IMG/VR virus record: IMGVR_UViG_3300043786_000977 | Coordinates: 144,909-208,908 of that record | DNA: 64,000 nucleotides | Reading direction: 5' to 3' (one strand) | Shown here: positions 41,495 to 64,000 of the stretch, piece by piece | Numbering within the stretch: position 1 is the stretch's first letter | How the letters are laid out: every line of letters starts with the position of its first letter | Program-made: the position numbers and the translations under genes | Notes under the pieces: model-generated | What the model saw: only the letters and a program-made list of their open reading frames with translations | What the model was told of the DNA's origin: nothing | Database searches by the model: none

Positions 41495-41497
41495 GCC

Positions 41498-41899: not shown

Positions 41900-42272
41900 A
41901 GCCAGGAGAAAGGGGTCACACCCTTTCTCTTAATTATCAGAGCATACGGGTTATAAGAAATAATGGTACCGATCTATATCAATTAACGTCCACAGATGTG
42001 ACGCTCAATTTGGTATGGTGGAGATGTGCCGGATACGAAGAGGTGTTTCATGAGCGTGTTTACCAATCGCAACGGGATCATGTACTATGTGGTCCATGGA
42101 CTCGTATTCTTCTCCCGACAGGCTGCACTTGAAGAGTGCCAGCAGTAGGGTACGATAAGCCGACCTGGCTCCCTGAACTCAATAGGCCAGTACAAACCGC
42201 AAACGATGAAGGGTTAGTTTGCGGCCGACAATCCCGACACCTGTCGGGCTTCTTTCTTTTTAGCTATTGCAG

Positions 42273-42301
42273 TTGACATTGATGCATAGATAACATAGGA
42301 T
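42273..42301 (+). promoter_or_regulatory. Sigma70-like promoter at the start of the virion/RNAP module
   Basis: TTGACA-17nt-TAGGAT directly after a hairpin and T-tract terminator. Confidence 0.6.
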
Positions 42302-42347
42302 GTAAACATTGTATTGGGCCATATAGGCTCTAACCCGGAGGATTAAC

Positions 42348-42950
42348 ATGAGTCAAGCATTACCGACAGCAACACCTGAACAGATTCTGGAATTCAAGAA
42401 GGGTGCTGCTGCCCGTTACAAGGAACAAGGTATCAGTCCGGCTGATGCCACCCGTCTATTCGACGCACATATGTCGAAGCTGGCCAACGATCTCGGTTTA
42501 ACGAGTAAACCGTTGAGCCCCAAGGCACAGAAGATTGCTGCAGCGATGAAGACGATCATCAAGCAAGCAAAGCCTAAACATGACTTTACTCTTGCCGAGG
42601 TTGCACGGCAGCGGGCCAAGAAGGGCCCGTGGTGGAAGGTCCAGCGCGTTAAGGGTACAGATGTGAGTGATGAAGAACGCGCTTCAGCTGAGAAATCTCT
42701 CGCAGCCCAGAAGAAGGCTGAAGAAGCCAAGGATAAAGATAAGGATAAAGAAAAGAAACCTGGCCGCATTCGTTCAGCTGCTGTCGGAGCCGGGCGTGGC
42801 GCACTAGCAGGTGGAGCGAGCGGGGTTGCGTTATCCGCCCTCGCCGAACTTCTTCATAGCCGTCGGTATCCCCACGATCCTTTTGCCGGCGCTGGTATAG
42901 GTGCTGGAGCTGGTGGCCTCATAGGTAGCGTCATCGGCGCAAATAAGTAA
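42348..42950 (+). CDS. Glycine-zipper protein with shared N-terminal module
   Basis: C-terminal GxxxG-rich segment. Confidence 0.7.
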   Translation: MSQALPTATPEQILEFKKGAAARYKEQGISPADATRLFDAHMSKLANDLGLTSKPLSPKAQKIAAAMKTIIKQAKPKHDFTLAEVARQRAKKGPWWKVQRVKGTDVSDEERASAEKSLAAQKKAEEAKDKDKDKEKKPGRIRSAAVGAGRGALAGGASGVALSALAELLHSRRYPHDPFAGAGIGAGAGGLIGSVIGANK

Positions 42951-42994
42951 ATACTAATACACCGAAATACGAATAGTTGACACAGGAGTCAAGA

Positions 42995-43627
42995 ATGCGC
43001 ATTACCAATATATTACCGAATCCCCGTTACTTCTCTTACGCCAACACCGTAGGCACGACATTGAAGCCGGGTGAGACGTCGATTGAGTTACCGCTTACCG
43101 CCATTCATAACACGTCACTGTGGAAGGATATCGATGGCGGGTGTGTTAAGCTGACACTCAACGAGGCCGATAAGTTGTTCCTCAACAAGTTACTGCGTGT
43201 AACCGCGGCCGATGCTGTGCCTGAGGTTAAGACCAAAGCGGGTAAACAAACAACACGGCAACGGCGTCAACAACAGGCCAAGCTACAGCGTATAGCCCGT
43301 GAGGCTGAGGCAGCAGAGATAAGGAAGAAGGCGCCCAAGCTGATAAATCCGGGTGGGGCTACAGGGCAGCCTGTCTTCGGTAAAGATACACCGATTCCCG
43401 TTGTAGAGTTAGGCAAGGCCGAGTCACTTGAACAACTCAAGCGGCACAATCACGGTGTCGAACTTAAACGTGCAACGATACCCACCGGGGTACCCAGTAA
43501 TCCAGCAGGTTCGGCCGCAGGGCAACCTGTCTTCAGTCCCGGCCCTGGCCCGGGTACGGAGAACAAGGGTATAGGCAAGGCGATACCGACGACCGTTGAC
43601 AACATGAAGCGAGGCAAGCTGGTATGA
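42995..43627 (+). CDS. Hypothetical protein
   Basis: SD CAGGAG. Confidence 0.65.
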   Translation: MRITNILPNPRYFSYANTVGTTLKPGETSIELPLTAIHNTSLWKDIDGGCVKLTLNEADKLFLNKLLRVTAADAVPEVKTKAGKQTTRQRRQQQAKLQRIAREAEAAEIRKKAPKLINPGGATGQPVFGKDTPIPVVELGKAESLEQLKRHNHGVELKRATIPTGVPSNPAGSAAGQPVFSPGPGPGTENKGIGKAIPTTVDNMKRGKLV

Positions 43628-44448
43628 GAAAAAGAACCCCGTTAGGCACTAAACCGGGTGCTGTTTGGGGGTCCGAAAAGAGTGGGTATCGTCACGAGGT
43701 ACTCCCGGGAGAAGGACCACCCGACAGACTTACAATACCTGTAGCAGCAATAAGTGGACGACAGGCAGGACGTCTAACGCCGGCCGAACGGAAATACCAC
43801 GCAGGAGTATACGAAGTCGTAGATGCAAGAGAGGCAGCAGTACGTATGGCAGCTAGATCAAAAGGACAGTTGAGACCCATCAATGGTGGGCTGGATGACG
43901 CACAGGTACCCCTGACGCGTAAGCAGGCGCAGCCGCGGCAGGTGATAACCCAACCACAACCGATCATAGGGGACGATACAGAGGTCATTGAATCAAACGA
44001 ACTGGATGCCTTTGAGCCGGGTATGCAGCAGACTGCAGACCCGCGATCCGTGAAGGGCTGGGTGGAGGCGGTACCTGGTTTTGCACAACCACCGAGTCAT
44101 AGGGTGCAGTTACCCGGAACGTATTCCAATCTGGAGGCTCAGACACGGGCAGAACAAAGCATAGGTATACAGCAGAAGTACCTGGCCCAGCGGCGCCGTA
44201 TCATGCTTGAGTTGACGGATACGACACTCACTATGTCAGCGATCGACGTGATCGTTAACAAGTACAGCGTAACTGTGCTCTTGCCTCAACTCGCAGATGG
44301 TGGTACATTTATACCGCGCTGTGGATCCGAATTGACCATATCGATGGCAGACGAGTCCATCGGTTGTTACTTTCCCGGAGCCCACTTCGAGATCCCGCAG
44401 CTGAAACTAATCGGATTGACATTCATCCGTAAGGAAGAAGGTACATGA
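43624..44448 (+). CDS. Hypothetical protein
   Basis: Overlapping start/stop. Confidence 0.65.
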   Translation: MRKRTPLGTKPGAVWGSEKSGYRHEVLPGEGPPDRLTIPVAAISGRQAGRLTPAERKYHAGVYEVVDAREAAVRMAARSKGQLRPINGGLDDAQVPLTRKQAQPRQVITQPQPIIGDDTEVIESNELDAFEPGMQQTADPRSVKGWVEAVPGFAQPPSHRVQLPGTYSNLEAQTRAEQSIGIQQKYLAQRRRIMLELTDTTLTMSAIDVIVNKYSVTVLLPQLADGGTFIPRCGSELTISMADESIGCYFPGAHFEIPQLKLIGLTFIRKEEGT

Positions 44449-44772: not shown

Positions 44773-46719
44773 ATGGCGACCCAAAACGCAATGCGCGGTT
44801 TCTTTAACTGGGATGAGGCGAGTGGTATCACTAAGGCCGGCGCGGGCAAGTACCCGAATCCGTTCTGCGATATCGCAAGCGAATATATCCCCAAGGATAT
44901 CAAGGAAATCTTCGAGTGGTGCGAATACTTGATGTTAAGTGTCACGCCCTTCCGTACTGTATCCCAACGCGTGGTACGGTACTTCCTGACTGAATTGGTA
45001 CTGGAAGGCCAGTCCGATAACGAGCGTGAGCAGTACGAAGACTTCTTGAATGACCAGCTACATATCCTGCAGCAACTCGCTGAAATCGGCGACGATTATA
45101 TGTGCTACGGGCAATCATTCATCAGCATATACTTCCCCTTCGACCGGTTCCTTATCTGTCCCCAATGCAATACGACCTATCACGTCGCAACACTGCAGTA
45201 TAAGTTTGAGCGTACCAAGGGTACCTTTAAGGTACACTGTCCGCGGTGTGACGCACAGGTTGAGATGCGGCGTGAAGACAGGCGCAGTTCTGATACGTCC
45301 CGGGTTAAACTGATTCGCTGGAACCCTAAGGAAATACGCCTGCGCGTACATCCGATCAGCGGGCATATCGAGTACTACCTCAAGCTGGACAGCGAGTTCG
45401 TAAGCAAGATTCTGGACGGCGAGCCGTTCTATCTGAACGAAACACCGTGGGCGATCATTGACGCTTGTATCAAGAGCGATAAGTCCAAGAAGGAGTACCT
45501 GTTTAAGTTCAAGGATGATTCGATTTATCATCTACGGTGCAGCACCCTGGCCGGCTTACCCATCAAGGGTTGGGCCATCCCGCCTATTCTGCCCAACTTC
45601 AAACTGGCCTACTATGTGCAGTTACTACGCCGGTACGACGAGGCCATCGCCTTGGATTTCATTATACCGTTCCGTATTCTGTTCCCGAACAACACATCGC
45701 CCCAGGGGCAAGACGCATTGTCTGCGATCAGCATGTCATCCTTTATCGGACACATGCAGGGCATGATTAACGCCAAGCGCAAGAACCTGACGGATATACA
45801 GGTATCACCGTTCTCGATCGGTTACGAGATGTTGGGCGGCGAAGCGAAGACACTGGCACCCAAGGACAATATAGCCTTGGCTGTAGATGAACTGTTGAAC
45901 TCGTTGGGTTATCCGGCTGAGATGTATAAAGGTACCCTGGCCTTCCAGGCGTTCCCCGTTGCCTTGCGGCTATTCGAGAAGCAGTGGAACAGTTTGGTAG
46001 ATGGTTATGACGACTTTCTTTCGTGGTTATTGAAACGGTTATCACGTCACTTCATGTGGGGTGAGATAAAGGGATCGTTGCGCAGCGTTACCTTGGCTGA
46101 CGATATCGAACGTAAGGCCTTATCCTTGCAGGGTGCGGCCGGCGGCGATGTGTCCAAGCAGACGGCTTATCGGCCTATGGGCATCGATTACATGGAAGAA
46201 CAGAAGCGTGTGGTGGAGGAACAGGAAGCCATCCAGAAGTTGCAGCAGGAAGCCATGGCCCGTCAACAGGCCCAGGCTGGCCAGCCGCAGGGTGGGCAGG
46301 AGAGCGGTCCGTCGTACGGCGCGACACCCGGAGACGTACAGGAACAGGCCAAGGCTTTGGCCCAACAGCTGTTGCTACAGACACCAGAGACTATGCGTCG
46401 CGGTGAACTGATCAAGATCAAACACAGCAACCCCACGCTTCACGCGCTGGTGTTGCAGGCGATGGATGAGATGCGTAAAGAGATGGCGCGACAGGGTCAG
46501 GCCCAGATTATGGAACAGGCCAAGTCCGCGGAGATCATCGGTTTTGGTCCTGCGAATACGTTGCCGAGTCCTATTCGTATTGGTCTGCTTGTAGCTGACC
46601 AGTTAACCGAATTCGGACCACATGAACTACGTAAGATGGCTATGGACATTCGTGATAAGATACCCCATGCGGATGAGGCATTCCGTTATGTCTATCGGCG
46701 TATGATGGGTTGGGCATAA
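44773..46719 (+). CDS. Putative portal protein with Zn-ribbon insertion
   Basis: 648 aa; DYMCYGQSF (YGNAF-like), IRWNPKEI, IYHLR, helical stem segment; CPQC/CPRC insert. Confidence 0.6.
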   Translation: MATQNAMRGFFNWDEASGITKAGAGKYPNPFCDIASEYIPKDIKEIFEWCEYLMLSVTPFRTVSQRVVRYFLTELVLEGQSDNEREQYEDFLNDQLHILQQLAEIGDDYMCYGQSFISIYFPFDRFLICPQCNTTYHVATLQYKFERTKGTFKVHCPRCDAQVEMRREDRRSSDTSRVKLIRWNPKEIRLRVHPISGHIEYYLKLDSEFVSKILDGEPFYLNETPWAIIDACIKSDKSKKEYLFKFKDDSIYHLRCSTLAGLPIKGWAIPPILPNFKLAYYVQLLRRYDEAIALDFIIPFRILFPNNTSPQGQDALSAISMSSFIGHMQGMINAKRKNLTDIQVSPFSIGYEMLGGEAKTLAPKDNIALAVDELLNSLGYPAEMYKGTLAFQAFPVALRLFEKQWNSLVDGYDDFLSWLLKRLSRHFMWGEIKGSLRSVTLADDIERKALSLQGAAGGDVSKQTAYRPMGIDYMEEQKRVVEEQEAIQKLQQEAMARQQAQAGQPQGGQESGPSYGATPGDVQEQAKALAQQLLLQTPETMRRGELIKIKHSNPTLHALVLQAMDEMRKEMARQGQAQIMEQAKSAEIIGFGPANTLPSPIRIGLLVADQLTEFGPHELRKMAMDIRDKIPHADEAFRYVYRRMMGWA

Positions 46720-53310: not shown

Positions 53311-54192
53311 ATGAATCCCTTACTTCTACGTTATCTAAAGTTGCTCAGTGGTTCAGGTATACGTACCTCGAAGGCCACGGGTGCGCCTATTGGTAAAGAG
53401 GTAGCGAAGACAGTTGGTACACAGTTGGGTACGGCTGGTGCTATTGCAGGTCTAGGTTACGGTGGGAAGAAAGTGGTAGAACATTATCCCGAACTCAAGG
53501 ATATGTTGGACAACGTATTTCACAAGAGTCGCATCGGCCGCGTGATGGACGGACTCGGTATAAAGACGAGTCAATATCAATATCAAGATCCGGACACACA
53601 ATTACGGACGTCGTTGTTGAGTTTGCTCGCCGGTGGTGTACCTGCTGGATTAGGTCAGTTTGCGCACGAGACGTTACCGGACTTGAAGCCACGTGAGCGT
53701 ATTGCCAAGCGTATACTTGCGCTATCACAGAAGCACCACAAAGGTGTTATAGAGGGCAGTCAGTACGCCTTCGATTCAAATACACGTAAGATTCACTCAC
53801 CAGATGGTCTCAAAGGTAATGTCGGAGCTATTGCTCATGAGGCAGGACATGCGATGGATCCGGTACTCAAGCGTACTGGACGTCTTCACAATATATTGCG
53901 CGGTGCTGGAGGTTTCGCAGGTAGTTGGGGTGCGATGGCAGCTTCTGATCGTGATACAGCACGGAACTACGCACTTGGCGGCAGTGCGCTTGCCTTACCC
54001 ACTTTAGCGCACGAGACCTATGCAGGAATCAAAGGTATGCAGTTGTTACGTCAGACATCACGGAAGATACCAACCAAGGTTTTGCTACGTGCCATGAGCG
54101 GACTACCATCTTATGCAGGTGCAGCCCTAGCACCTTTGGCAGTTTACGGCACCCGGTCAGCATTGGGAGGCTTCGGAGATAAAAATGATTAG
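53311..54192 (+). CDS. Putative Zn-metallopeptidase (HExxH) with glycine zippers
   Basis: AIAHEAGHA plus downstream LAHE. Confidence 0.6.
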   Translation: MNPLLLRYLKLLSGSGIRTSKATGAPIGKEVAKTVGTQLGTAGAIAGLGYGGKKVVEHYPELKDMLDNVFHKSRIGRVMDGLGIKTSQYQYQDPDTQLRTSLLSLLAGGVPAGLGQFAHETLPDLKPRERIAKRILALSQKHHKGVIEGSQYAFDSNTRKIHSPDGLKGNVGAIAHEAGHAMDPVLKRTGRLHNILRGAGGFAGSWGAMAASDRDTARNYALGGSALALPTLAHETYAGIKGMQLLRQTSRKIPTKVLLRAMSGLPSYAGAALAPLAVYGTRSALGGFGDKND

Positions 54193-57100
54193 TACACCAC
54201 CGGCATCGCCATTACCATCACACTTGCGGGATTTCGACGATACCGACAAGGCACGGGAACTGATTTATTCCGGTGCCCTGGATGCGGTATCGAAACGTTT
54301 TCCTGTCGAAGATGACGAGTATCGCGTTGAGTTACACAAACCACGATATACCGGGGTTCAGACCTATTCGCTGGAGCAACAGAAGCAGGCGCTGATGAAG
54401 GAGCGTCGTCTGACTACACCGATCACGGGTACCTGGAAACTGGTGCACAAGCCCACGGGTGCTGTGCTGGATGAGCGTGAGGATGTCGTGATGAATGTGC
54501 CCTATTACACGCAGCGGGGTACTTTCATTCACGGCGGTAACGAGTACAGTGTTGTGAACCAGGCACGCTTGCGTCCTGGCGTGTACATTCGGCGCCAACG
54601 TACGGGTGAGATAGAAGGCCACGTCAACGTCAAGTCGGGTTCGGGTAAACCATTCCGCGTGCAGCTGGAACCCAACACTGGTGTGTTCAAGTTACACGTG
54701 GGGCAGTCCAACGTACCGCTTTATCCGTTAATGCGTGCCGTAGGTGTCACGGATCAGCAACTGATCAAGGCGTGGGGTGCTGACCTTGTGGCAGCCAATA
54801 TCAAGAAGCAGGATCCGCGGTCAATCGCGAAGTTGTATGATCGCTTCGCCGGTTATAAAGCTGAACCTGGTATAGATGAAGCGGGTCAGACAAAGTATCT
54901 TCGAGATTCATTACCGTTATTTGAGTTGGACGAGGATGTCAACGCACGTACGCTCGGTCTTACAGGAGCTAAGGGTGTAACGCCTGATGTACTCCTGCGT
55001 ATGACTTCGAAGATGTTGGGTGTATCGCGTGGCGAAGAGGATCCGGATGATCGTGACTCTCCACAGTTCAGTCATATCTACGGCGTGGAAGATCTCATAC
55101 GTGAACGTATTGATAAGGATGCGGGTAAGCTGACACAGAGTATGCTGCGCAAGGTACGGCGTTCGCGTAATCTCCAGGCTGTGCGCCGTGGTGCCTTGAA
55201 CTCTTATCTCGATAGCCTGTTGTTAGGCTCAGGGCTGGCAATGCCTTTGGAGGAAACGAACCCGTTGCATACACTTGAGCAGCTGAATCGTATCACCAAA
55301 CTCGGTGAAGGCGGTATTGGATCGGCTGAGGCCATTACAGATGAGGCCCGTGACGTTAACTCAGGGCAGTTCGGTTTTGTGGATCCGATCACTGGACCAG
55401 AGGGTTGCCAAGCTTCTTCAATGCAAGTACTTACGTATGATGGTTGGGTATCGTGGCCGAACGTAACTATGGATATGCGTTTGGCATGCAACATTGACGG
55501 TCAATTGGAATACCATAAGCCTACTGAATTACATGCGTTTGATCACGATGGTTGGATCTATGAGGCCCGTACTAAGCACCTAGCGTTCAGTGTAACAGGT
55601 GATCATAAGATTTGGAATCGTGCGTACGATCCGGGATCCGCGTATCGCTGGGAGCGTGTAGGTGCGTCATTTGAGCGTGATCGGCATATCTGTATAGGCG
55701 GACATTCGCCCGTGTCTGGTTGCGATACTGACTTCGAACTTCCGATTGTCGAGGGTGGTCATGCGCTTAAACTTACGACGACAACCATCCCTATGTTACT
55801 GTGGGCCGAATTCATGGGGTGGTTTCTAAGCGAGGGTAGCACCTGTGTTAGATCCGACGGACAGATTCAGGTCAGTATCGCGCAACACGATCCGGAGAAC
55901 CAGGAGCGGATACGTCGTGTTTTGACACAACTTCCATTTGAGTTTTCGGAGAATCGAGTTCATGGTGAGTTGCACGCTTTTATAATTGTGCGTAAACAGC
56001 TTGGAGTGTATCTGCAACAGTTCGGTCGTTCTGCAGACAAGTATATTCCACAGTATTTGCTTGATGCCAGTATTGAAGCCCGTAAGGTGTTGTTGTCGTC
56101 TTTGTGCGCGGGCGACGGGCGGCGTAAAGGTTCTACGTACACATATTGCACGACAAGTCATCGACTTGCACTTGATGTTGAGCGTCTTGCGTTTTCGTTG
56201 GGTTACTCCGTACGTGTACGTTTCGAGAAGGACGATCGACCCCAGGCATTACAGGGCGGCACGTGGTGCGTGCATTTGCATCTCACCAAGGAACGCTGTG
56301 TCCTAAAACGTCATATGTCTCGTCGTCCTTACACTGGAAAGGTTTACTGCGCCACGGTACCCGGTAGTCAACTGTATGTACGTTTGGGTGACTACGGTGG
56401 GCACTGGTCCGGGAACATGAACATCGGTATTGACGTGCGTGCAGCCTATCGTACGTTCAAGGGTAACGATAACAACATGTACGCCGAGTTCAACGACATA
56501 GGTACGGGGAAGCCCGTTTATCTGCGCCCTGACGAAGCCGCGTCACGTGTCGTGGCATTTCCCGGGCAAGACCCCAAGGCGGCTACGATATACGCTATGC
56601 GTCGTGGGAAGGTTGAACGTGTACCGCGGGCGGAAGTTGACCTCGCTGTACCTTCGTTCGCACACATGATGTCCAGTCATACCAATCTCAATCCGATGCC
56701 GACAGCTGTACAAGCCGGTCGTCAGTTCTACGGTGCCAAGTTCTGGAGCCAGTACATGCCACAAGTGGCAGGTGAGGTACCTCTTGTTGACTCGCTCATG
56801 CCTGATGGCAAGACGACGTGGACTGAGCACTACGGGCGCAAGGTGGGTACGTTAAAGAGTGACGTGGGTGGTACGGTCGTTAAGGTGACTGATAAGGGTG
56901 TGACCGTCATGGATGCCGATGGTAAAAAGCATCTGAACGAGTTGGTGAAGGACTTCCCGTTTAATCGGTTGACAGGTATCAGTTACTTCCCGACTGTAAA
57001 AGTAGGTGACCAAGTCAATGTTGGTGATATGGTTGCCCACTCTAATTTCACGGACTCTAAAACAGGGGCGTTGAATCTTGGCCGCAATTTGCGTACAGCC

Positions 57101-59584
57101 ATCATCCCGTACAGGGGACACTCGTATGAGGATGCTTACGTGATCTCCAAGACCGCGGCTGATAAGCTGGCTTCGGAGCGTTTACAGGGCTTCGATCTGG
57201 ATGCACGCCACGGTGTCGAGATGGGACGTAACAAGTACATCTCTGCATTCCCGCGTGCGTATACGACGGAGCAGATAGATAATCTGGATGATGATGGCGT
57301 GGTTAAACCCGGTACTGTGTTGAAAAAGGGTGACCCGATCGCTTTAGCCGTAGGCCCGCGTCTACTTACAAGCGCCGACGCCCAGTTAGGTAAACTGCAT
57401 AAGGTATTACGAAGTGCCTATACCGATAAGTCATTGACATGGGATTACTCAGGCCCGGGCACAGTTACGGATGTCGCACTGACACGGAACGGTGTTCGTG
57501 TGAATATAAAGAGCACACCGCCTGTAAGCCAAGGTGATAAACTGTCGACACGCTTCGGACTGAAAGGTGTTGTTGGTACCATTTTGGATGACGATAAGAT
57601 GCCCAGGGATCCAGTAACCAATCAGCCCTATGAACTGTTACTGAATCCGATGGCCGTACTCTCACGCGTGGCGCCGAACCAGATCATGGAAATGGCGCTC
57701 GGTAAGATCGCAGCTAAGACAGGCAAGCAGGTTCGTATACCCCAGGAGCCACCACCAGAGGGTTGGATGAACTGGGTACAGGCGCAACTCGACGAAGCAG
57801 GTATAAAGGATTCTGCGGATATCTTTGATCCGGAGAGCGGTAAGACGATCCGTAACATCGGTGACGGTAGCGTATACGTGTCCGCCTTCCATCACTTGGC
57901 CGAGAAGAAGTTATCGAGCCGCGGTGACATCGGCAGTTATTCAGCTGACGAACAGCCAGCCCGCGGTGGTAGTACCGGGGCAAAGAAGTTTTCACAGATG
58001 GACGTTAACGCGGCCCTGGCTCACGGGGCGACAGATGTCATCAAGGACGTGATCACCATTCGTGGTACCAAGAACGAGGAGTTCTGGAAGGCCCTTAAAC
58101 TTGGCCGGCCGCTACCTGAACCCAAGGTGCCGTTCATATACGACAAGTTCCTGAATACCTTACGTGCCGGTGGGATCAACGTTGTAGAGAAAGGCGACAT
58201 GACACAGTTGTTGCCTATGATGGACGACGACGTTAAACAGTTGTCGAAGGGTGTTGTGACCAGTAGTGATATGGTTGATTCTGATTTTGAACCGATGGCT
58301 GGTGGTCTCTTCGATGTCGGACGTACAGGTGGTATGGCAGGTAACCGGTGGACACATATCGAGTTGCCTGAACCACTCCCTAACCCCGTAATGGAAGAAC
58401 CGATCCGTCGTTTGCTCGGGCTCAAGATACAGGATATGGAAGATATCGTGGCTGGGCGTAAGGAGTTGAATGGTCAAACGGGTGGCGGTGCGTTAAAGGC
58501 TGCACTTGAGAAGATAGACCTGGATGCCATGATCACAGAGCACAGGCAGAAGGTACGGGTACTGCGTGGTGCTAATCGCGATAACTCGGTAAAGGTGTTG
58601 GGCTATCTTGCCTCTGCCAAGGAGCAAGGTATTCATCCCGCGAAATGGATCATCAGCAAGGTACCTGTATTGCCACCTGTCTTCCGTCCTATTTCGCGTA
58701 TGGGTGACGTAGCCTTGTCTGCAGACTTGAATGAGCTATACCGTGACGTGTTGGAGAGTTCTAAGACATTCAAGGAACTCAAACCAGATCTGCCAGATTC
58801 CGAGTTGGCAGATGAACGCTTGAACATATACAACTCTGTGCGTGCGGCATACGGCTTCGGCGATTCGATTACACCTGAGGGTCGATCGAAGCATCTTAAG
58901 GGCGCCGTACGTCAAGTCATCGGTACGTCTCCGAAGTTCGGGTTGTTCCAGTCCAAGGTTATATCAAAGCCGGTTGATGTTGTGGGACGTGGTGTGGTTA
59001 TACCCAACCCCAACCTGGATATGGATCAGCTCGGTATTCCTGCCGATTCGGCGTGGACATTGTACAAGGACTTCGTGATGCGCGCCCTCGTTCGCCACGG
59101 GTACCCGGCGATACGTGCAGCCGAAATGCTTGAGAACCGAACACCGGAAGCCAAGGAGATGCTGGAGAAGGAAATGTCAACACGGCCGGTGATTATGGAT
59201 CGGGCACCGACGTGGCATAAATTCAACCTGTTGGCGTTCTACCCGCATATCGTTGAGGGTCATACGCTCCAGGTCAGCCCATTGGTGACCAAGGGTTTCA
59301 ATATGGACTTCGACGGAGACCAGGCCAACTTCCATGTACCGGTCTCAGATAAAGCCGTCAGCCAAGCGACACGTAAGATGCTACCGTCAGCAAATCTATT
59401 CAGCTTAACGGATCTACAGTCGGTCCGGCATGCACCGTCAATGGAGATGACATACGGACTGTACCAACTTACACGGGAACAAACGAAGAAACCGACACGT
59501 GTATTTAAGACAGCAAAGGAAGCAAGGGCAGCATATAAAGCGGGAGAAATCGCCGCGAACGATCCAATTGAAATACTTGCCTGA
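54185..59584 (+). CDS. Phage multisubunit RNA polymerase: beta fused to the N-terminal half of beta', intein-containing
   Basis: Beta motifs QRGTFI..NQARLRPGVY, PEG..NIG, YEDAYVIS, GDKLSTRFGLKG, LNP..VLSR, HH..KKLSSR; beta' motifs HIELP, VPVLPPVFRP, DLNELY, KPVD..GRGV, RAPT, catalytic NMDFDGD. Confidence 0.93.
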   Translation: MISTPPASPLPSHLRDFDDTDKARELIYSGALDAVSKRFPVEDDEYRVELHKPRYTGVQTYSLEQQKQALMKERRLTTPITGTWKLVHKPTGAVLDEREDVVMNVPYYTQRGTFIHGGNEYSVVNQARLRPGVYIRRQRTGEIEGHVNVKSGSGKPFRVQLEPNTGVFKLHVGQSNVPLYPLMRAVGVTDQQLIKAWGADLVAANIKKQDPRSIAKLYDRFAGYKAEPGIDEAGQTKYLRDSLPLFELDEDVNARTLGLTGAKGVTPDVLLRMTSKMLGVSRGEEDPDDRDSPQFSHIYGVEDLIRERIDKDAGKLTQSMLRKVRRSRNLQAVRRGALNSYLDSLLLGSGLAMPLEETNPLHTLEQLNRITKLGEGGIGSAEAITDEARDVNSGQFGFVDPITGPEGCQASSMQVLTYDGWVSWPNVTMDMRLACNIDGQLEYHKPTELHAFDHDGWIYEARTKHLAFSVTGDHKIWNRAYDPGSAYRWERVGASFERDRHICIGGHSPVSGCDTDFELPIVEGGHALKLTTTTIPMLLWAEFMGWFLSEGSTCVRSDGQIQVSIAQHDPENQERIRRVLTQLPFEFSENRVHGELHAFIIVRKQLGVYLQQFGRSADKYIPQYLLDASIEARKVLLSSLCAGDGRRKGSTYTYCTTSHRLALDVERLAFSLGYSVRVRFEKDDRPQALQGGTWCVHLHLTKERCVLKRHMSRRPYTGKVYCATVPGSQLYVRLGDYGGHWSGNMNIGIDVRAAYRTFKGNDNNMYAEFNDIGTGKPVYLRPDEAASRVVAFPGQDPKAATIYAMRRGKVERVPRAEVDLAVPSFAHMMSSHTNLNPMPTAVQAGRQFYGAKFWSQYMPQVAGEVPLVDSLMPDGKTTWTEHYGRKVGTLKSDVGGTVVKVTDKGVTVMDADGKKHLNELVKDFPFNRLTGISYFPTVKVGDQVNVGDMVAHSNFTDSKTGALNLGRNLRTAIIPYRGHSYEDAYVISKTAADKLASERLQGFDLDARHGVEMGRNKYISAFPRAYTTEQIDNLDDDGVVKPGTVLKKGDPIALAVGPRLLTSADAQLGKLHKVLRSAYTDKSLTWDYSGPGTVTDVALTRNGVRVNIKSTPPVSQGDKLSTRFGLKGVVGTILDDDKMPRDPVTNQPYELLLNPMAVLSRVAPNQIMEMALGKIAAKTGKQVRIPQEPPPEGWMNWVQAQLDEAGIKDSADIFDPESGKTIRNIGDGSVYVSAFHHLAEKKLSSRGDIGSYSADEQPARGGSTGAKKFSQMDVNAALAHGATDVIKDVITIRGTKNEEFWKALKLGRPLPEPKVPFIYDKFLNTLRAGGINVVEKGDMTQLLPMMDDDVKQLSKGVVTSSDMVDSDFEPMAGGLFDVGRTGGMAGNRWTHIELPEPLPNPVMEEPIRRLLGLKIQDMEDIVAGRKELNGQTGGGALKAALEKIDLDAMITEHRQKVRVLRGANRDNSVKVLGYLASAKEQGIHPAKWIISKVPVLPPVFRPISRMGDVALSADLNELYRDVLESSKTFKELKPDLPDSELADERLNIYNSVRAAYGFGDSITPEGRSKHLKGAVRQVIGTSPKFGLFQSKVISKPVDVVGRGVVIPNPNLDMDQLGIPADSAWTLYKDFVMRALVRHGYPAIRAAEMLENRTPEAKEMLEKEMSTRPVIMDRAPTWHKFNLLAFYPHIVEGHTLQVSPLVTKGFNMDFDGDQANFHVPVSDKAVSQATRKMLPSANLFSLTDLQSVRHAPSMEMTYGLYQLTREQTKKPTRVFKTAKEARAAYKAGEIAANDPIEILA
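55406..56416 (+). mobile_element. Intein (337 aa) with LAGLIDADG homing endonuclease in RNAP beta
   Basis: Starts CQASSMQVLTYDGW; blocks FMGWFLSEGS and LCAGDG; ends VYCATVP...WSGN; interrupts PEG|xNIG. Confidence 0.9.
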
Positions 59585-59592
59585 GGTTAGTC

Positions 59593-59621
59593 TTGCAAAA
59601 GTGAGACCAGGGTTGTACTAT
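59593..59621 (+). promoter_or_regulatory. Sigma70-like promoter
   Basis: TTGCAA-17nt-TACTAT. Confidence 0.5.
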
Positions 59622-59656
59622 TGTGTTGGTTGATGGCTAAAGAAAGGGTTCATACT

Positions 59657-60145
59657 ATGGTTAAACTAGATCGTGCATTGTTAGCAGAAGTCAAGCGGGC
59701 CTTCGTCCCACAACCTGGTGGCGGTGGTGAACCGGTTGCTGGAGCGAGTCAGATGACCGCAGGAATGGGTGCTCCGATGGGCGCGCCCCCGGGCGGTGAT
59801 CCAGCGGCTGCGGGCGGTGCTATGCCTGCTCCTATGCCTCCCGCGGGCCTCGATCCTGCAATGGCGGGAATGATGGGCGGTGGCGGGGCAGCACCGGATC
59901 AGGGAATGACAGGATCATCACAGTTGAACCTCACTGTTGACGACCTGATCAAGTTGTTCAAGGTCTTCCAGCGGAACTCGGGTGGTGGCGGGGCGCCAGC
60001 AGCGGCACCAGCCGCAGCGCCGGCAGCAGCAGCTCCGCAAGGTGGTGACCCGCGTATTGATCGTCTTGTGACTATACTGGAACAGGCGCTCGGACAAGGT
60101 GGCGGAGGTGGCGGGGGCAGTGAGTTTGACAGCCAGCAGGCGTAA
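59657..60145 (+). CDS. Low-complexity Gly/Ala/Pro/Met-rich protein
   Basis: EVKRAF then GAPM/APAAAP repeats. Confidence 0.7.
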   Translation: MVKLDRALLAEVKRAFVPQPGGGGEPVAGASQMTAGMGAPMGAPPGGDPAAAGGAMPAPMPPAGLDPAMAGMMGGGGAAPDQGMTGSSQLNLTVDDLIKLFKVFQRNSGGGGAPAAAPAAAPAAAAPQGGDPRIDRLVTILEQALGQGGGGGGGSEFDSQQA

Positions 60146-60158
60146 GGCAGATTAACCT

Positions 60159-60440
60159 ATGGCAACAAAGGCACAACATGTGATCGTTCATGGTGGTGAC
60201 ATCCGGAAGCCCCCGCTATTGGACAGTGCCGAACCACGGTTGGTTGTATTCAATGATACAGAAGGTTTACCGATGGCATTCTTTGCGCGGTTACCTGATA
60301 ATCTTTGGGGCCTGGCGACACGCGGTGATCCCGATTGGGCTGAGATGCTTGTTAAGTATGGATTGGTCGGAATGCATGCTGGAACAAAACCACAAGATGT
60401 TATTACAGATGGCGTAGCGCCTTTTATAACGGAGGAGTAA
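60159..60440 (+). CDS. Hypothetical protein
   Basis: ORF in operon. Confidence 0.6.
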   Translation: MATKAQHVIVHGGDIRKPPLLDSAEPRLVVFNDTEGLPMAFFARLPDNLWGLATRGDPDWAEMLVKYGLVGMHAGTKPQDVITDGVAPFITEE

Positions 60441-60442
60441 CA

Positions 60443-60940
60443 ATGGCACCAAATGACGATAGTAGCAGAATCATACATCACAACAAACTGGCTGCGATTC
60501 GAGCAGAGATCTCAGCTAGTGGGCTATCGCCAGAGATTTGTGATTTAATGCAGACGAAGATCGACGATGCTGATCTGATCTATAGTCTATCACAGATAGA
60601 GGCCCCGTCTGCCGAGGAGATTGTCCAAAATGTGCGGACTATTGCCCGATTACTTAGCGATAAAATCTCAACTGACGTGCGACATGAAGTAAGGTCACAG
60701 GCAAAACTAAGGGCGACGATTATTGAAGCCGTTCAGTCTTCTGTTCCGGGTTCGGTTACTTCAGCTTTTTCAAACCTAACTGAATGTCCTGTGCGTATTA
60801 AGCGTCAAGCTTGCACATGGCGCGATACGTTAAAGATGGCTGTCGGTAAAAGTCCACTTGCAATTGCACTCATAGTAGCAGCGTTGGCTCTTTCCGGTCA
60901 TTTGAATTGGGTAGCTAAACTGATCGGACTTGGTCTGTGA
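60443..60940 (+). CDS. Hypothetical protein with C-terminal TM helix
   Basis: SD GGAGG; LAIALIVAALAL. Confidence 0.6.
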   Translation: MAPNDDSSRIIHHNKLAAIRAEISASGLSPEICDLMQTKIDDADLIYSLSQIEAPSAEEIVQNVRTIARLLSDKISTDVRHEVRSQAKLRATIIEAVQSSVPGSVTSAFSNLTECPVRIKRQACTWRDTLKMAVGKSPLAIALIVAALALSGHLNWVAKLIGLGL

Positions 60941-60966
60941 TCCTCACATTCTCAGGTTAATATATA

Positions 60967-62814
60967 ATGCGAACCACTGTCGGTCAACTGCTTGTCAACG
61001 ACGCACTCCCGGAAGAATTCCGGGATTACACACGTGTATTGACTAAGGGCGACACCGATAAGTTATTGGCCGCTGTTGCAAAGACGCGGCCAGATGATTA
61101 TCGTGATATTTCACACAAGCTGGTACAGCTTGGGCGTAACGCAGCGTTCGAAGAAGGTACTACCTTGCGTTTGGGCGATCTACGAGCCCCTGTTGATAAG
61201 GCGGAGTTGTTAGATCATATCACGCAACAGGAAGACCGGATTACCGCAGATAAGACCATGACGCCGGCCGATAAGCAGGAAGCACGGGAGACCGTGTACT
61301 CTGAAGTCAATGATGCTTTGAAGAAGATGACCATGGACGCGTCTCTGGCTTCCGAGAATCCGTTTGCCTTACAGGTGAAGTCCAAGGCACGTGGTAATCC
61401 CGATCAGTTGGCAGCCATGCTTACGACGCCTGGTGTATACCAGGACGCCAAGGACAATATCATACCCGTGTTCATACGTCACAGCTACGCCGAGGGTCTA
61501 CAACCCCACGAGTACTGGGCAGCCACGTACGGGGCGCGTAAGGGCGTTATATCCTCGAAATTCGCCACTCGTCAAGCCGGGGCTCTTGGGAAGTTATACG
61601 GTATGGCCGTAATGGATTCTGTCGTCACCCAGGACGATTGTGAATCCCCGTATGGTATACCGGTAAAAGCGGACGATAATGACAATCTAGGTTCGGTTTT
61701 ATCGCGTCCCGTCGCCGGATTTACCGCGGGGACGGTAATAGATAAGCATGTTATGGCTGCGTTGCAGAGTAAGAAGATCGATCAGATCGTTGTGCGTTCG
61801 CCTATTACTTGTACGTTATCCAAGGGTGTATGCAAACACTGTGTGGGTCTACGGGAAGGCGGCGAGTTCCCGCCCATTGGGTACCACATCGGATTGAATG
61901 CCGCGTCTGCGATGGCAGAACAGATTGCCCAGGCATCGCTCAACGTAAAGCACTCCGGAAAGAAAGCTAAGGGTCAGACGACCTACTCTGGTTTTAACGT
62001 CATCAAGAATCTATCCACGGTACCGCAGACATTTCCGGATCGTGCGACAGTCGCCGAACGCGACGGTAAAATCACTAAGGTTGCTGAGGCGCCACAGGGT
62101 GGTTATCACGTCTACATCGACGACGAGGAACACTACGTCCCGGCCGGTATGGACCTGCACATCAAGGAAGGGGATACGGTTGAGGCCGGTGATCAGTTGT
62201 CGGACGGTATCGTCAATCCTTCAGACGTTGTACGTTTGAAGGGTTTGGGGGAAGGCCGGCGATACTTTGCAGAACGGTTGACACAGGCATTCCGTGAAAC
62301 CAATTTCGGGGTGAACCGCCGTAATGCTGAGGTCCTGGCACGTTCGATCGTGAATCACATACAGGTCGACGACGACGGTGCCGCGGGCGAACATCTACCG
62401 GGGGATGTTGTTACATACGGATCATGGGCCTACGGATATCGGCCGCGCAAGGATGCGAAGCGTTTAACGCCCAAGGCTGCGCTGGGGCAGTACTTGGAAG
62501 AACCCGCCATGCATTATACGGTCGGTACCCGTGTCACAAAAAATATGGCGAATATGTTACAACAACAAGGGACACAGGATATACTTACACACACGGCACC
62601 TGTGGGTGTTTCGCCTGTGATGATGTCTGTTGTTAAAACGCCCGAGTATACGGATGACTGGATGGCACGTTTGAGTTCAACCTACTTGAAGACACGGTTG
62701 CTGGAAGATGTACACGCCGGCGCCAAGTCAAACGTACACGGGATTCATCCGATCCCGGGTATTGCGAAGGGCACGGAGTTCGGACAGCAAAAGGGTAAGA
62801 CGTTCACGTACTAA
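60967..62814 (+). CDS. Phage RNA polymerase beta' C-terminal half
   Basis: TTVGQLL, SKARGN, SYAEGL..Y....YGARKG (bridge helix), DDC, VRSPITC..GVCKHCVG Zn site, IG..AA.A.AEQ..Q..L..KH (trigger loop). Confidence 0.92.
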   Translation: MRTTVGQLLVNDALPEEFRDYTRVLTKGDTDKLLAAVAKTRPDDYRDISHKLVQLGRNAAFEEGTTLRLGDLRAPVDKAELLDHITQQEDRITADKTMTPADKQEARETVYSEVNDALKKMTMDASLASENPFALQVKSKARGNPDQLAAMLTTPGVYQDAKDNIIPVFIRHSYAEGLQPHEYWAATYGARKGVISSKFATRQAGALGKLYGMAVMDSVVTQDDCESPYGIPVKADDNDNLGSVLSRPVAGFTAGTVIDKHVMAALQSKKIDQIVVRSPITCTLSKGVCKHCVGLREGGEFPPIGYHIGLNAASAMAEQIAQASLNVKHSGKKAKGQTTYSGFNVIKNLSTVPQTFPDRATVAERDGKITKVAEAPQGGYHVYIDDEEHYVPAGMDLHIKEGDTVEAGDQLSDGIVNPSDVVRLKGLGEGRRYFAERLTQAFRETNFGVNRRNAEVLARSIVNHIQVDDDGAAGEHLPGDVVTYGSWAYGYRPRKDAKRLTPKAALGQYLEEPAMHYTVGTRVTKNMANMLQQQGTQDILTHTAPVGVSPVMMSVVKTPEYTDDWMARLSSTYLKTRLLEDVHAGAKSNVHGIHPIPGIAKGTEFGQQKGKTFTY

Positions 62815-63211: not shown

Positions 63212-64000
63212 ATGACAAAGACTTTCAATTCATTGTTGGCGCAGGTACCAAAGAGCCTGGAGCCTTTTGGTTACGTCAAGCAGGCAGGGCCTGGGGGCGT
63301 CGAGAGCCCTGACGAGAACCAACTAGAACAGGACTTCTCACGGTTGGCGTATATGTTCGTACAGGATCGTGCGTCGCCATTGATGAAGTATATGCTGGGC
63401 TTCGAGGTCGTTAACCGTGAGGAAGACGGCTCAAGAGCGGTAGGTCTGTTTGGCTTCAAGATCGGCAAGGACTATTACTATGTCCCGGCCTTCTTCGTGA
63501 ACAACCAGATCAAGGGTGTGGATCTTCTATTCTCCAAGCGCACGAACATGTTCGTACCTCTCCAGGAAGACTGGATCAATTATATCGTCAATCGCCAGAC
63601 GATCGAACTCGGCGGACAGGCCGAGGATAAGGTACAACGTGACTTTGAGAATCCGAACTTCGATTTCTTATCACGGCCACCTATCGGACCGAAGACGGCC
63701 GAAGCACCCTGGTCGTTCAAGGAAGCATGGTACCAGCTCCAGATGCAGTTAAATGAAAAACTGGAGAAGGATGCCGCGTTCCAGGAGGCCTGGGGCGGTC
63801 TCGTATGCAGCATAATGAACAAGGACCTACCGTTTGAAAAGACAGGCGAAGCGAGCCCGTTGAAGACGTGGCTCGAAAAGCGCGGCGGACCTAAGGCAGT
63901 AAGTACGTTCCTGAATACGTTAACCAGGAATCCCAAGTACGCCAACGCCGCCCTTACATTTTACCCATCAGTCGAGTCCCTGTACGTGCATCAGTTCGCG
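63212..64000 (+). CDS. Large hypothetical (putative virion) protein, truncated by the window end
   Basis: SD AAGGAG; open frame of 263 codons to the window end, MTKTFNSLL...YVKQAG. Confidence 0.75.
   Translation, partial: MTKTFNSLLAQVPKSLEPFGYVKQAGPGGVESPDENQLEQDFSRLAYMFVQDRASPLMKYMLGFEVVNREEDGSRAVGLFGFKIGKDYYYVPAFFVNNQIKGVDLLFSKRTNMFVPLQEDWINYIVNRQTIELGGQAEDKVQRDFENPNFDFLSRPPIGPKTAEAPWSFKEAWYQLQMQLNEKLEKDAAFQEAWGGLVCSIMNKDLPFEKTGEASPLKTWLEKRGGPKAVSTFLNTLTRNPKYANAALTFYPSVESLYVHQFA

What the first reader, a model, noticed from the sequence alone, without database searches (positions are those of the whole stretch)
54185..62814. Two-chain RNAP with unusual topology: beta fused to the N-half of beta', beta' C-half separate, Zn-binding domain deleted, NMDFDGD active site
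Seen: beta C-terminal motifs run directly (~58180) into beta' N-terminal motifs. The beta' Cys4 zinc-binding domain between GLF and HIEL is absent (GLFDVGRTGGMAGNRWTHIELP). The catalytic motif is NMDFDGD (59300-59320). The bridge helix and trigger loop are in a separate gene three ORFs later. Known: phiKZ/AR9 RNAPs split both beta and beta' into separate chains, while cellular beta-beta' fusions are full-length. Inference: a distinct RNAP architecture; its placement among virion genes suggests a packaged enzyme.
Basis: partly seen in the sequence, partly recalled or inferred. Interest (0 to 1): 0.62.

Follow-up and report, generated by a model that had tools for sequence, protein, structure and literature searches.

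The report
Phage RNA polymerase with fused subunits
A 209-kb lake phage makes its own bacterial-type RNA polymerase from two genes (beta joined to the first half of beta', and the second half of beta' alone). This undescribed layout is shared by a large phage clade that includes cultured Salmonella and Vibrio phages, and here the gene also carries an intein with an odd splice junction.

Summary
ORF 54185-59584 encodes a complete beta joined without a linker (about residue 1336, window about 58190) to beta' residues equivalent to E. coli 16-552. ORF 60967-62814 encodes the rest of beta': bridge helix, second zinc site and trigger loop. The Cys4 zinc-binding domain is replaced by an 11-residue Cys-free loop, and the catalytic motif reads NMDFDGD.

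It is not an artefact. The same layout occurs in 79 of 80 related IMG/VR loci, in at least 120 metagenomic protein clusters, in Salmonella phage Arash and in Vibrio phages D69, D148 and D181. Independent lake metagenomes hold the junctions letter for letter. The clade is monophyletic and separate from bacterial beta'.

The genome has one RNAP set, no alpha or omega, and a sigma-70-like gene. In Arash, virion mass spectrometry finds all three homologues abundantly, so a packaged enzyme is likely but not shown here.

Its downstream flank is Met, not Cys, Ser or Thr.

The searched literature describes neither the topology nor the clade's RNAP. Verdict: a real new variant of a known kind, and experimentally tractable.

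The parts
54185..59584 (+). Gene for the beta::beta'(N-half) fusion protein with an intein (1799 aa; about 1462 aa without the intein)
   Evidence: ORF list and translation. Pfam Rpb2_3, Rpb2_6, Rpb1_1, Rpb1_2 and LAGLIDADG_3. NCBIfam best match is the beta/beta' fusion model, far below its cut-off. Homologous one-ORF genes in Arash and Vibrio phage D69.
54185..55405 (+). Beta, N-terminal extein (residues 1-407), ending in GPEG
   Evidence: Alignment with intein-free relatives L007 and P0003, which read GPEGMNIGID.
55406..56416 (+). LAGLIDADG intein (residues 408-744), Cys1 to Asn744, followed by Met instead of Cys, Ser or Thr
   Evidence: Absent from the 95%-identical P0003. AlphaFold pLDDT 89.4. 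Foldseek best matches are the TliVMA, PI-SceI and PI-PfuI inteins, E 8e-18. DNA at both junctions read directly. Identical junctions in independent metagenome contigs.
56417..58189 (+). Beta, C-terminal extein (residues 745 to about 1335), reaching the equivalent of E. coli beta residue 1338 of 1342
   Evidence: Family HMM against E. coli rpoB. Pfam Rpb2_6 at residues 932-1261.
58190..59584 (+). Beta' N-terminal half (residues about 1336-1799), equivalent to E. coli beta' 16-552, ending just after the catalytic double-psi beta-barrel
   Evidence: Structure alignment at Z 23.5 to E. coli, Thermus and cyanobacterial gamma chains. phmmer against PDB beta' chains, E 2e-51.
58301..58369 (+). Place of the missing Cys4 zinc-binding domain: a short Cys-free loop between GLFD and RWTHIEL
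   Evidence: The segment has no Cys in nearly all of the 66 aligned relatives; the one exception is a mis-aligned, intein-bearing row. The model shows a short helix followed by a strand here.
59300..59320 (+). Catalytic motif NMDFDGD; all three Asp are kept and Ala is replaced by Met
   Evidence: Translation. The family varies here: GADFDGD is commonest, with NADFDGD, NMDFDGD and, in Arash and D69, AADYDGD.
59621..60940 (+). Three small ORFs of unknown function between the two RNAP genes (59621-60145, 60159-60440, 60443-60940)
   Evidence: No Pfam or PHROG match. Conserved in only 0-5 of 82 related loci, so they are probably not part of the enzyme.
60967..62814 (+). Gene for the beta' C-terminal half (615 aa): bridge helix (61513-61617), second zinc site, trigger loop (61879-61962)
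   Evidence: Pfam Rpb1_5. phmmer against M. smegmatis beta' 664-1182, E 1e-36. BLAST against E. coli beta'. Always a separate ORF in the 69 related loci where it was found.
44773..46719 (+). Portal protein homologue; marks the virion-gene context upstream of the RNAP genes
   Evidence: BLASTP against Arash gp204 portal, E 5e-85.

Best explanation
The two genes encode the catalytic core of a phage-borne, bacterial-type multisubunit RNA polymerase reduced to two polypeptides.

Chain 1 is a whole beta subunit, with its C-terminus joined directly to the N-terminus of beta'. It runs through the clamp helices and the Mg-binding double-psi beta-barrel, and it lacks the N-terminal zinc-binding domain. 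Chain 2 supplies the rest of beta': secondary-channel rim, bridge helix, second zinc site, trigger loop and C-terminal clamp parts.

The phage encodes no alpha or omega. I infer that the covalent beta-beta' link takes over the job of the alpha dimer in holding the two large subunits together. A sigma-70-family protein encoded elsewhere in the genome, at G000:27005-27724 and outside the window, probably gives promoter specificity, since the beta' clamp helices that bind sigma are retained.

Before the enzyme can work, a 337-residue LAGLIDADG intein inserted in the conserved beta motif (E. coli TPEGPNIG) has to be removed.

The genes lie in the late, structural block, and their homologues are abundant in Arash virions. 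The enzyme is therefore most likely packaged and injected to transcribe early genes independently of the host. It is the only RNAP set in the genome.

Shown here: the gene anatomy, its conservation, the monophyly of the clade, the missing zinc domain, the intein fold, and the absence of alpha and omega homologues. Inferred: assembly without alpha, use of the phage sigma, packaging in this phage, and the way the intein is removed.
For: Anatomy.

Conservation and authenticity:
- In 79 of 80 IMG/VR loci one ORF crosses the junction. Beta'C is always separate: 67 downstream at 0.85-5.9 kb and 2 upstream.
- 1934 protein clusters match at E<=1e-10, and the best 120 are all fusions of 1169-2868 aa that carry beta (Rpb2) and beta' (Rpb1) Pfam domains.
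- Arash gp206 and gp216, and Vibrio D69 0261 and 0264, have the same layout.
- Contigs from independent lake and freshwater runs of 2016 and 2024 bridge both intein junctions and the beta/beta' junction with 0 differences; 2020 contigs also match without a difference but do not bridge them.

Phylogeny of the beta' barrel region: 44 fused-type rows form one group (SH-aLRT 99, stem length 0.69), apart from 15 bacterial rows.

Genome content: one RNAP set only, no alpha and no omega.

Sigma: Sigma70_r3 E 6e-9 plus a weak region 4 match. PDB SigA chains match at E 2e-6. It is the homologue of Arash gp10.

Virion evidence in a relative: in Arash, gp206 is the most-detected protein, gp216 is fifth, and gp10 has 100% coverage. 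By my arithmetic the spectra per residue are 2.3, 2.0 and 2.0.

Synteny: portal, then RNAP, then capsid module, as in Arash.
Against: - There are no biochemical data for any member of the clade.
- The Arash virion proteome lists 116 proteins, including ribonucleotide reductases. Its authors themselves allow that some are carry-over from lysates.
- Arash shares only 27-33% identity with this phage, so packaging here is an extrapolation.
- The neighbours of the RNAP genes in the window have no recognisable function.
- A crude k-mer scan of 106 upstream regions found only a Shine-Dalgarno signal and no phage-specific promoter.
- The intein's downstream flank is Met. By the canonical mechanism it could not splice, so the mature form of beta is uncertain.
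- A conserved 770-830 aa protein of unknown function follows beta'C in 60 of 82 loci. It could be a further subunit.
Confidence: 0.75

Rival explanations
1. The enzyme is real but is not packaged. It is made after infection, with the first genes read by host RNAP (perhaps redirected by the phage sigma-like protein), and serves only middle or late transcription. Its presence in Arash virion preparations would then be contamination.
For: The Arash proteome holds 116 proteins, many of them plainly non-structural enzymes, and its authors raise this possibility. The phage sigma-like protein could equally act on host core RNAP. There is only one RNAP set, whereas phiKZ-type phages need two, one packaged and one not.
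Against: Gp206 is the single most-detected protein in Arash particles. Gp206, gp216 and gp10 give nearly equal spectra per residue, as a stoichiometric packaged complex would. The genes sit inside the structural block between portal and capsid genes in both phages.
Confidence: 0.2
2. The mature enzyme has three chains. The intein, lacking a downstream nucleophile, only cleaves at both of its ends, which leaves beta split at GPEG / MNIGID into an N-terminal piece (407 aa) and a beta(C-part)::beta'(N-half) piece.
For: Met (here) or Leu (in six relatives) follows the intein's terminal Asn, while Cys1, the block B His and the terminal Asn are all conserved. Without a +1 nucleophile the branched intermediate cannot form, and cleavage products dominate in type A BIL domains (PMC4031507). 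Split beta subunits do work in phiKZ-type phages.
Against: The nearest intein-free relatives (P0003 at 95% identity, and L007) have an uninterrupted GPEGMNIGID, so the continuous chain is the functional form in the same lineage. The site is a buried, highly conserved motif next to the active centre. Type A BIL domains can also ligate their flanks by aminolysis.
Confidence: 0.12
3. The fusion or the odd junctions are assembly or sequencing artefacts, or the genes are cellular rpoB/rpoC on a chimeric contig.
For: The source is a metagenome-assembled record. Relatives are found inside MAG bins of many bacterial phyla.
Against: The same layout occurs in isolate genomes and in 79 of 80 related viral contigs. 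Independent assemblies from other studies bridge the junctions with 0 differences. The record is a complete 208,908-bp virus genome with terminal repeats and has portal, capsid and terminase homologues. The clade is separated from bacterial beta' by a long, well-supported branch. True bacterial loci have separate beta and beta' ORFs.
Confidence: 0.01

Closest known systems
Salmonella phage Arash (OQ632216; gp206 + gp216) and Vibrio phages D69, D148 and D181
   Same: Same gene layout: a beta::beta'N fusion of about 1525 aa and a separate beta'C of about 606 aa. Same loss of the zinc-binding domain. Same neighbourhood (portal upstream, capsid module downstream) and a homologous sigma-like gene. 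They belong to the same monophyletic clade.
   Different: Only 27-33% identical. No intein in beta. The catalytic motif is AADYDGD rather than NMDFDGD. The genomes are 181-188 kb. The Arash paper annotates both genes as 'beta' or 'beta prime' subunits and does not describe the fusion, the split or the missing zinc domain.
mReC phages (multi-subunit RNAP-encoding Caudovirales, Weinheimer & Aylward 2020) and Kleczkowskaviridae such as Rhizobium phage RHph_TM30
   Same: Large tailed phages whose RNAP is clearly alignable to bacterial beta and beta', and which form lineages outside the cellular ones.
   Different: mReC contigs carry separate full-length genes: beta of about 900-1520 aa and beta' of about 900-1390 aa, some with two sets. 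TM30 has one beta' gene of 1127 aa and falls outside the fused clade on a long branch. mReC capsid proteins match Pfam PF07068, whereas the capsid protein of this phage has no Pfam match.
phiKZ/AR9-type jumbo phage virion and non-virion RNAPs
   Same: No alpha or omega. Beta' is cut after the catalytic barrel. One enzyme is packaged in the virion.
   Different: Those phages have two RNAP sets, beta itself is split into two or three genes, nothing is fused, and no sigma homologue is encoded. Their sequences are far more divergent: only cellular beta' chains appear among the best 60 of 109 PDB matches to the beta'N part and the best 60 of 78 to beta'C.
Cyanobacterial and plastid gamma (rpoC1) / beta' (rpoC2) split
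   Same: Beta' is divided in the same inter-domain region, after the catalytic barrel and before the bridge helix.
   Different: The cut is not at the same residue. The phage N-half ends at about position 554 of the 619-position gamma model, and the phage C-half starts about 16 residues before rpoC2 begins. In E. coli numbering the phage cut is at about 553-570, against an estimated 618 or so for cyanobacteria. Cyanobacteria keep the zinc domain, beta as a separate chain, alpha and omega.
Cellular beta::beta' fusions (Helicobacter and Wolbachia type; NCBIfam NF007172 and NF011417)
   Same: Beta C-terminus joined to beta' N-terminus. These models are the best NCBIfam matches of chain 1.
   Different: The cellular fusions contain the whole of beta' (models of 2839 and 2890 positions) and work together with alpha and omega. 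Here beta' is cut in two. Scores are far below the family cut-offs (310 against 5372 bits).
Type A bacterial intein-like (BIL) domains
   Same: A HINT domain with an N-terminal Cys and a C-terminal Asn but no nucleophilic residue after it. These domains are reported to ligate their flanks by aminolysis, or simply to cleave (PMC4031507).
   Different: The element here is a typical homing intein: it has a LAGLIDADG endonuclease domain, sits in a conserved site of an essential enzyme, and its sister copies have Ser or Thr at +1. BIL domains lack endonucleases and sit in variable, often secreted proteins (that last point is from my own knowledge).

Membership tests
Bacterial-type multisubunit RNAP catalytic core (beta/beta') | Beta domains, including the double-psi barrel region and the C-terminal clamp part | tested here: met
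   Pfam Rpb2_3 and Rpb2_6 above cut-off. E. coli beta 113-1338 aligns to the family HMM.
Bacterial-type multisubunit RNAP catalytic core (beta/beta') | Beta' Mg-binding triad in the (N)ADFDGD loop | tested here: met
   The motif is NMDFDGD, with all three Asp present. Ala is replaced by Met.
Bacterial-type multisubunit RNAP catalytic core (beta/beta') | Bridge helix, trigger loop and second (C-terminal) zinc site | tested here: met
   All lie in ORF 60967-62814. The alignment to E. coli beta' 744-936 shows four Cys conserved and the trigger-loop His kept; E. coli Met932 and Arg933 align with Leu and Asn.
Bacterial-type multisubunit RNAP catalytic core (beta/beta') | N-terminal Cys4 zinc-binding domain of beta' | tested here: not met
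   An 11-residue Cys-free loop stands in its place. The segment has no Cys in nearly all of the 66 aligned relatives; the one exception is a mis-aligned, intein-bearing row.
Bacterial-type multisubunit RNAP catalytic core (beta/beta') | Alpha dimer and omega as assembly subunits | tested here: not met
   No match to PF01000, PF01193 or PF01192 in the complete genome, while the controls match in 14 of 14 genomes. Very divergent analogues cannot be excluded.
mReC clade (Weinheimer & Aylward 2020) | Separate beta and beta' genes of at least 800 aa each, with an NADxDGD motif (the paper's own selection rule) | tested here: not met
   Here the genes are fused and split, and the motif is NMDFDGD.
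mReC clade (Weinheimer & Aylward 2020) | Major capsid protein of Pfam family PF07068 | tested here: not met
   The capsid homologue at G000:9479-10453 has no Pfam match at E<=0.1.
phiKZ-type phage RNAPs | Two paralogous sets, beta split into two or three genes, no sigma homologue | tested here: not met
   One set only. Beta is in one gene. A sigma-70-like ORF is present.
Cyanobacterial-type beta' split | Cut at the gamma / beta' boundary | tested here: not met
   The cut is in the same region but is displaced by about 16-65 residues.
Class 1 intein | HINT fold with Cys or Ser at position 1, a block B His and a terminal Asn | tested here: met
   Cys408, a TGDH motif and Asn744 are present. The fold matches the TliVMA and PI-SceI inteins at E 8e-18.
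Class 1 intein | Cys, Ser or Thr as the first residue of the C-extein | tested here: not met
   The residue is Met745 (atg at 56417-56419). The same letters stand in independent assemblies. Six relatives have Leu.
Class 1 intein | Protein splicing activity | not testable with these tools
   This needs expression and mass spectrometry.
Sigma-70 family (for the ORF at G000:27005-27724) | Regions 2, 3 and 4 | tested here: inconclusive
   Region 3 is above the Pfam cut-off (36.4 bits). Region 4 is below cut-off (E 4e-4 and 3e-3). Region 2 is not detected here and is weak in Arash gp10.

The most novel reading that the evidence does not exclude
This clade carries the smallest known sigma-dependent cellular-type RNA polymerase: two chains (beta::beta'N and beta'C), no alpha, no omega and no zinc-binding domain. 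It would be packaged in the virion together with its own sigma-70-like factor, giving host-independent, promoter-specific transcription from the moment of injection. In this phage and six relatives, the essential beta chain would in addition be matured by a true homing intein that ligates its flanks without any downstream nucleophile. That would be the first natural intein to use the aminolysis route so far known only from BIL domains.
Probability: 0.25. Interest if true: 0.85.

Novelty: new variant of a known kind. Interest (0 to 1): 0.6.

Why it matters
Multisubunit RNA polymerases are thought to need an alpha-type platform to assemble. PhiKZ-type phage enzymes manage without one in an unknown way. 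This clade suggests a simple alternative, covalent tethering of beta to beta', in an enzyme still close enough to bacterial RNAP (27-31% identity over the catalytic half) to be modelled and compared residue by residue.

The clade is large: 1934 clusters at E<=1e-10 in the one search run. It is widespread in lakes, sediments and guts, and it has cultured members on Salmonella and Vibrio. Biochemistry, cryo-EM and rifampicin experiments are therefore feasible now.

The work would show which parts of the bacterial enzyme are dispensable (zinc-binding domain, alpha, omega), and whether a sigma-70-type factor can work on such a core and travel in a capsid.

The gene is also a remarkable intein hotspot. 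The Met or Leu at +1 offers a natural test of whether homing inteins can splice without a C-extein nucleophile.

Tried and rejected
- Megablast of the region against 50,697 phage records found no match. Relatives appear only at the protein level.
- PHROGs and Pfam on nine neighbouring ORFs gave nothing usable. The virion context therefore had to be argued from homology to Arash.
- The Pfam Sigma70_r2 search of the genome was negative. The sigma-like gene was found only through Arash gp10, and then through Sigma70_r3.
- I first suspected the clade was the published mReC group. That paper's supplement shows separate beta and beta' genes, so I rejected the idea.
- I considered that Met at +1 was a sequencing error (ACG to ATG). 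I rejected this because independent assemblies agree and six diverged relatives have Leu there.
- I considered shifted intein boundaries. The intein-free alleles fix the boundaries exactly.
- The k-mer search for a shared promoter in 106 upstream regions found only AAGGAG, the ribosome-binding site.
- The genome-contig scan gave no host. Relatives lie in MAG bins of unrelated phyla, most likely as mis-binned phage contigs.
- Literature searches for a description of the fusion found none. The library is not complete, so an existing description elsewhere cannot be excluded.
- I did not run the large profile search (search of protein representatives). The word search had already shown abundance.
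Full report
SOURCE. The window is the last 64 kb of a complete 208,908-bp virus record with direct terminal repeats. Near-identical DNA occurs in lake-water and freshwater metagenomes: five runs from separate studies, dated 2016 to 2024, each hold at least half of the sampled words. One of those five may be the source sample.

THE OBSERVATION. ORF 54185-59584 (1799 aa) and ORF 60967-62814 (615 aa) are both on the + strand and are separated by three small ORFs.
- In the first ORF, Pfam finds the beta domains Rpb2_3 and Rpb2_6, followed by the beta' domains Rpb1_1 and Rpb1_2, plus a LAGLIDADG signal. In the second ORF it finds Rpb1_5.
- A profile built from 48 intein-free relatives aligns E. coli beta 113-1338 (of 1342) to positions 96-993, and E. 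coli beta' 160-550 to positions 1075-1458.
- An AlphaFold model of residues 1230-1799 has mean pLDDT 88.3. From model residue 107 onward it superposes on E. coli beta' 16-552 (Z 23.5, rmsd 4.6 A, 451 residues), on Thermus beta' 3-831 and on Synechococcus gamma 7-558 of 617.
- Beta' therefore begins at about residue 1336 (window about 58190), directly after the end of beta and with no linker.
- Between GLFD and RWTHIEL the phage protein has 11 residues and no cysteine. By my reading of the E. coli sequence, E. coli has about 43 residues there, including the four zinc ligands. The segment has no Cys in nearly all of the 66 aligned relatives; the one exception is a mis-aligned, intein-bearing row.
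- The catalytic loop reads NMDFDGD at window 59300-59320.
- The second ORF starts at the equivalent of E. coli beta' residue 570 (TTVG). It contains the bridge helix, four Cys of the second zinc site and the trigger loop, with no SI3-type insertion.

NOT AN ARTEFACT, AND NOT UNIQUE.
- A scan of IMG/VR found 159 relatives. In 79 of the 80 loci kept, one ORF crosses the beta/beta' junction.
- The C-terminal half of beta' is always a separate ORF. It lies 0.85-5.9 kb downstream in 67 loci (median 1.0 kb) and upstream in 2.
- A word search of the 5.8-billion-protein collection gave 1934 clusters at E<=1e-10. The best 120 are all fusions of 1169-2868 aa that carry beta (Rpb2) and beta' (Rpb1) Pfam domains.
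- Four deposited isolate genomes have the same two-gene layout at about 33% identity over the fusion protein: Salmonella phage Arash (gp206, 1525 aa; gp216, 606 aa) and Vibrio phages D69, D148 and D181.
- Contigs from independent runs of 2016 and 2024 bridge both intein junctions and the beta/beta' junction without a single difference; 2020 contigs also match without a difference but do not bridge them.

PLACE AMONG RNAPs.
- In a maximum-likelihood tree of the beta' barrel region, all 44 fused-type sequences form one group (SH-aLRT 99, stem 0.69 changes per site). These include Arash, D69 and 11 contigs that had been binned into bacterial or archaeal MAGs. The group stands apart from 15 bacterial beta' sequences.
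- Rhizobium phage TM30 falls outside the group on a long branch.
- True bacterial loci recovered by the same scan have separate beta and beta' ORFs.
- The published mReC clade was my first suspicion. Its supplement lists separate beta and beta' genes for every contig in the part I read, and its text never mentions a fusion, a split or zinc.
- TM30 (Kleczkowskaviridae) has one full-length beta' gene.
- PhiKZ-type enzymes split both subunits, come in two sets and have no sigma.
- The two NCBIfam models for cellular beta/beta' fusions are the best NCBIfam matches, but they span a whole beta' and score far below their cut-offs.
- The cut in beta' lies in the same inter-domain region as the cyanobacterial gamma/beta' cut, which the phiKZ cuts are said to coincide with. 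It is displaced, however: the phage N-half ends near position 554 of the 619-position gamma model, and the phage C-half starts about 16 residues before rpoC2.

WHAT ELSE BELONGS TO THE ENZYME.
- The complete genome has only this one RNAP set and no match to the alpha or omega families.
- It does encode a 239-aa sigma-70-family protein at G000:27005-27724. Sigma70_r3 matches at E 6e-9 and region 4 matches weakly. SigA chains in the PDB match at E 2e-6, and PHROG 'RNA polymerase sigma factor' matches at E 2e-12. It is the homologue of Arash gp10.
- The beta' clamp helices are retained in the alignment to bacterial beta'. By established knowledge these are the main sigma docking site.
- I infer, but have not shown, that this sigma serves the phage core.
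- A protein of 770-830 aa with no recognisable domain follows the beta'C gene in 60 of 82 loci. It might be a further partner.

PACKAGING.
- The portal homologue lies 7.5 kb upstream (window 44773-46719, E 5e-85). Capsid and other structural homologues follow at the start of the record, in the same order as in Arash.
- The Arash paper reports virion mass spectrometry. Gp206 is the most-detected protein (3516 spectra), gp216 is fifth (1210), and gp10 sigma has 100% coverage (467).
- Per residue these counts come to 2.3, 2.0 and 2.0 by my arithmetic, which is what an equimolar complex would give.
- The same list contains many enzymes, and the authors allow for carry-over. Packaging is therefore likely for the clade but unproven for this phage.

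THE INTEIN.
- Residues 408-744 (window 55406-56416) are absent from the 95%-identical relative P0003 and from L007, which read GPEGMNIGID.
- The insert begins with Cys, has a TGDH block B and two LAGLIDADG motifs, and ends HWSGN. Its model (pLDDT 89.4) matches endonuclease-bearing inteins: TliVMA at E 8e-18, then PI-SceI and PI-PfuI.
- It interrupts the beta motif that is TPEGPNIG in E. coli.
- In most relatives the intein at this spot sits one residue earlier, as PE|C...GN|S, which is canonical. Ten sequences share the register GPEG|C...GN|x. In these, x is Ser or Thr in three, Leu in six, and Met here.
- The Met codon was read directly and is the same in independent assemblies.
- The Leu and Met copies are full length and keep Cys1, the block B His and the terminal Asn at only 46-57% mutual identity. 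This argues for continued selection on self-processing.
- Canonical splicing needs Cys, Ser or Thr at +1. [quoted passage not shown]
- Which of these happens here cannot be decided by computation.
- Across the family I counted at least twelve intein insertion sites in the fused gene, one of them inside the DFDGD loop.

MECHANISM, WITH ITS LIMITS.
- Shown: the anatomy, its conservation, the absence of the zinc domain and of alpha and omega homologues, the presence of a sigma-like gene, and the intein fold.
- Inferred: the tether replaces the alpha platform; the phage sigma directs the enzyme; the enzyme is injected and starts early transcription; the intein is removed by a nucleophile-free route.
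- A crude search for a shared promoter word found only the ribosome-binding site.

NOVELTY.
- The kind of object, a phage-encoded cellular-type RNAP, is known.
- The chain topology is what is new: whole beta plus the first half of beta' in one chain, the second half alone, no zinc-binding domain, and its own sigma. It was not described in any paper I could search, including the paper on the cultured member Arash.
- I rate the finding as a new variant of a known kind. It is of solid interest because the clade is large and has culturable members.

Noticed in passing
window 55406-56416 (and relatives P0006, P0009, P0010, P0024, P0032, P0067): The LAGLIDADG intein in beta is followed by Met (Leu in six relatives) instead of the Cys, Ser or Thr that canonical protein splicing needs. 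Three sister copies in the same register have Ser or Thr. Cys1, the block B His and the terminal Asn are all conserved.
   Followed up: partly
relatives P0004-P0119 and L011-L084, mapped on P0003 coordinates 124, 352, 377-395, 405/406, 591, 640, 782, 793, 931, 1246, 1374-1376: The fused RNAP gene is an intein hotspot, with at least twelve different insertion sites across the family and up to four inteins in one protein (for example P0032, 2868 aa). One site lies directly inside or after the catalytic DFDGD loop.
   Followed up: partly
outside the window: G000:C1:27005-27724 (L090:1006-1725): A sigma-70-family ORF of 239 aa (region 3 above the Pfam cut-off, region 4 weak). It is the homologue of Arash gp10, which was found in virions with 100% coverage.
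   Followed up: partly
window 63212-64000 (runs off the end of the record): This ORF's full-length homologues (770-830 aa) follow the beta'C gene in 60 of 82 related loci. It has no Pfam or PHROG match and could be a structural protein or a further RNAP partner.
   Followed up: partly
window 83-9902: A cluster of ten tRNA genes on the + strand: Ile, Leu (two), Met, Thr, Ala, Tyr, Asn, Cys and His.
   Followed up: no
L111:1380-1520 (2.9-kb contig in a Desulfonatronovibrio MAG bin): In this relative the fusion gene is interrupted by a stop and a new ATG about 15 residues after the beta/beta' boundary. This is either a secondary gene fission or a sequencing error. It does not coincide with the cellular subunit boundary.
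   Followed up: partly
L143:2722-8277 (883-kb contig of a Vicinamibacterales MAG): An 1852-aa ORF with beta-like and beta'-like stretches at about 24% identity, on a very long branch. It appears to be a different fused RNAP-like protein inside a bacterial chromosome.
   Followed up: no
L093-L112 (genome contigs): Phage contigs of this clade, many of them 100-200 kb, are filed inside MAGs of unrelated phyla (Balneolaceae, Nanopelagicales, Gemmataceae, Thermoguttaceae, Moraxellaceae, even a Thermoplasmata archaeon). This is most likely mis-binning, so these labels give no host.
   Followed up: no
window 61879-61962 (P0002 residues 305-332): In the trigger loop the His equivalent to E. coli His936 is kept, but the residues aligned with Met932 and Arg933 are Leu and Asn.
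   Followed up: no
window 28000-44000: AT skew rises to 0.11-0.20 here, against 0.02-0.09 elsewhere. One of the few long minus-strand ORFs (40259-41689, 476 aa) lies in this stretch.
   Followed up: no
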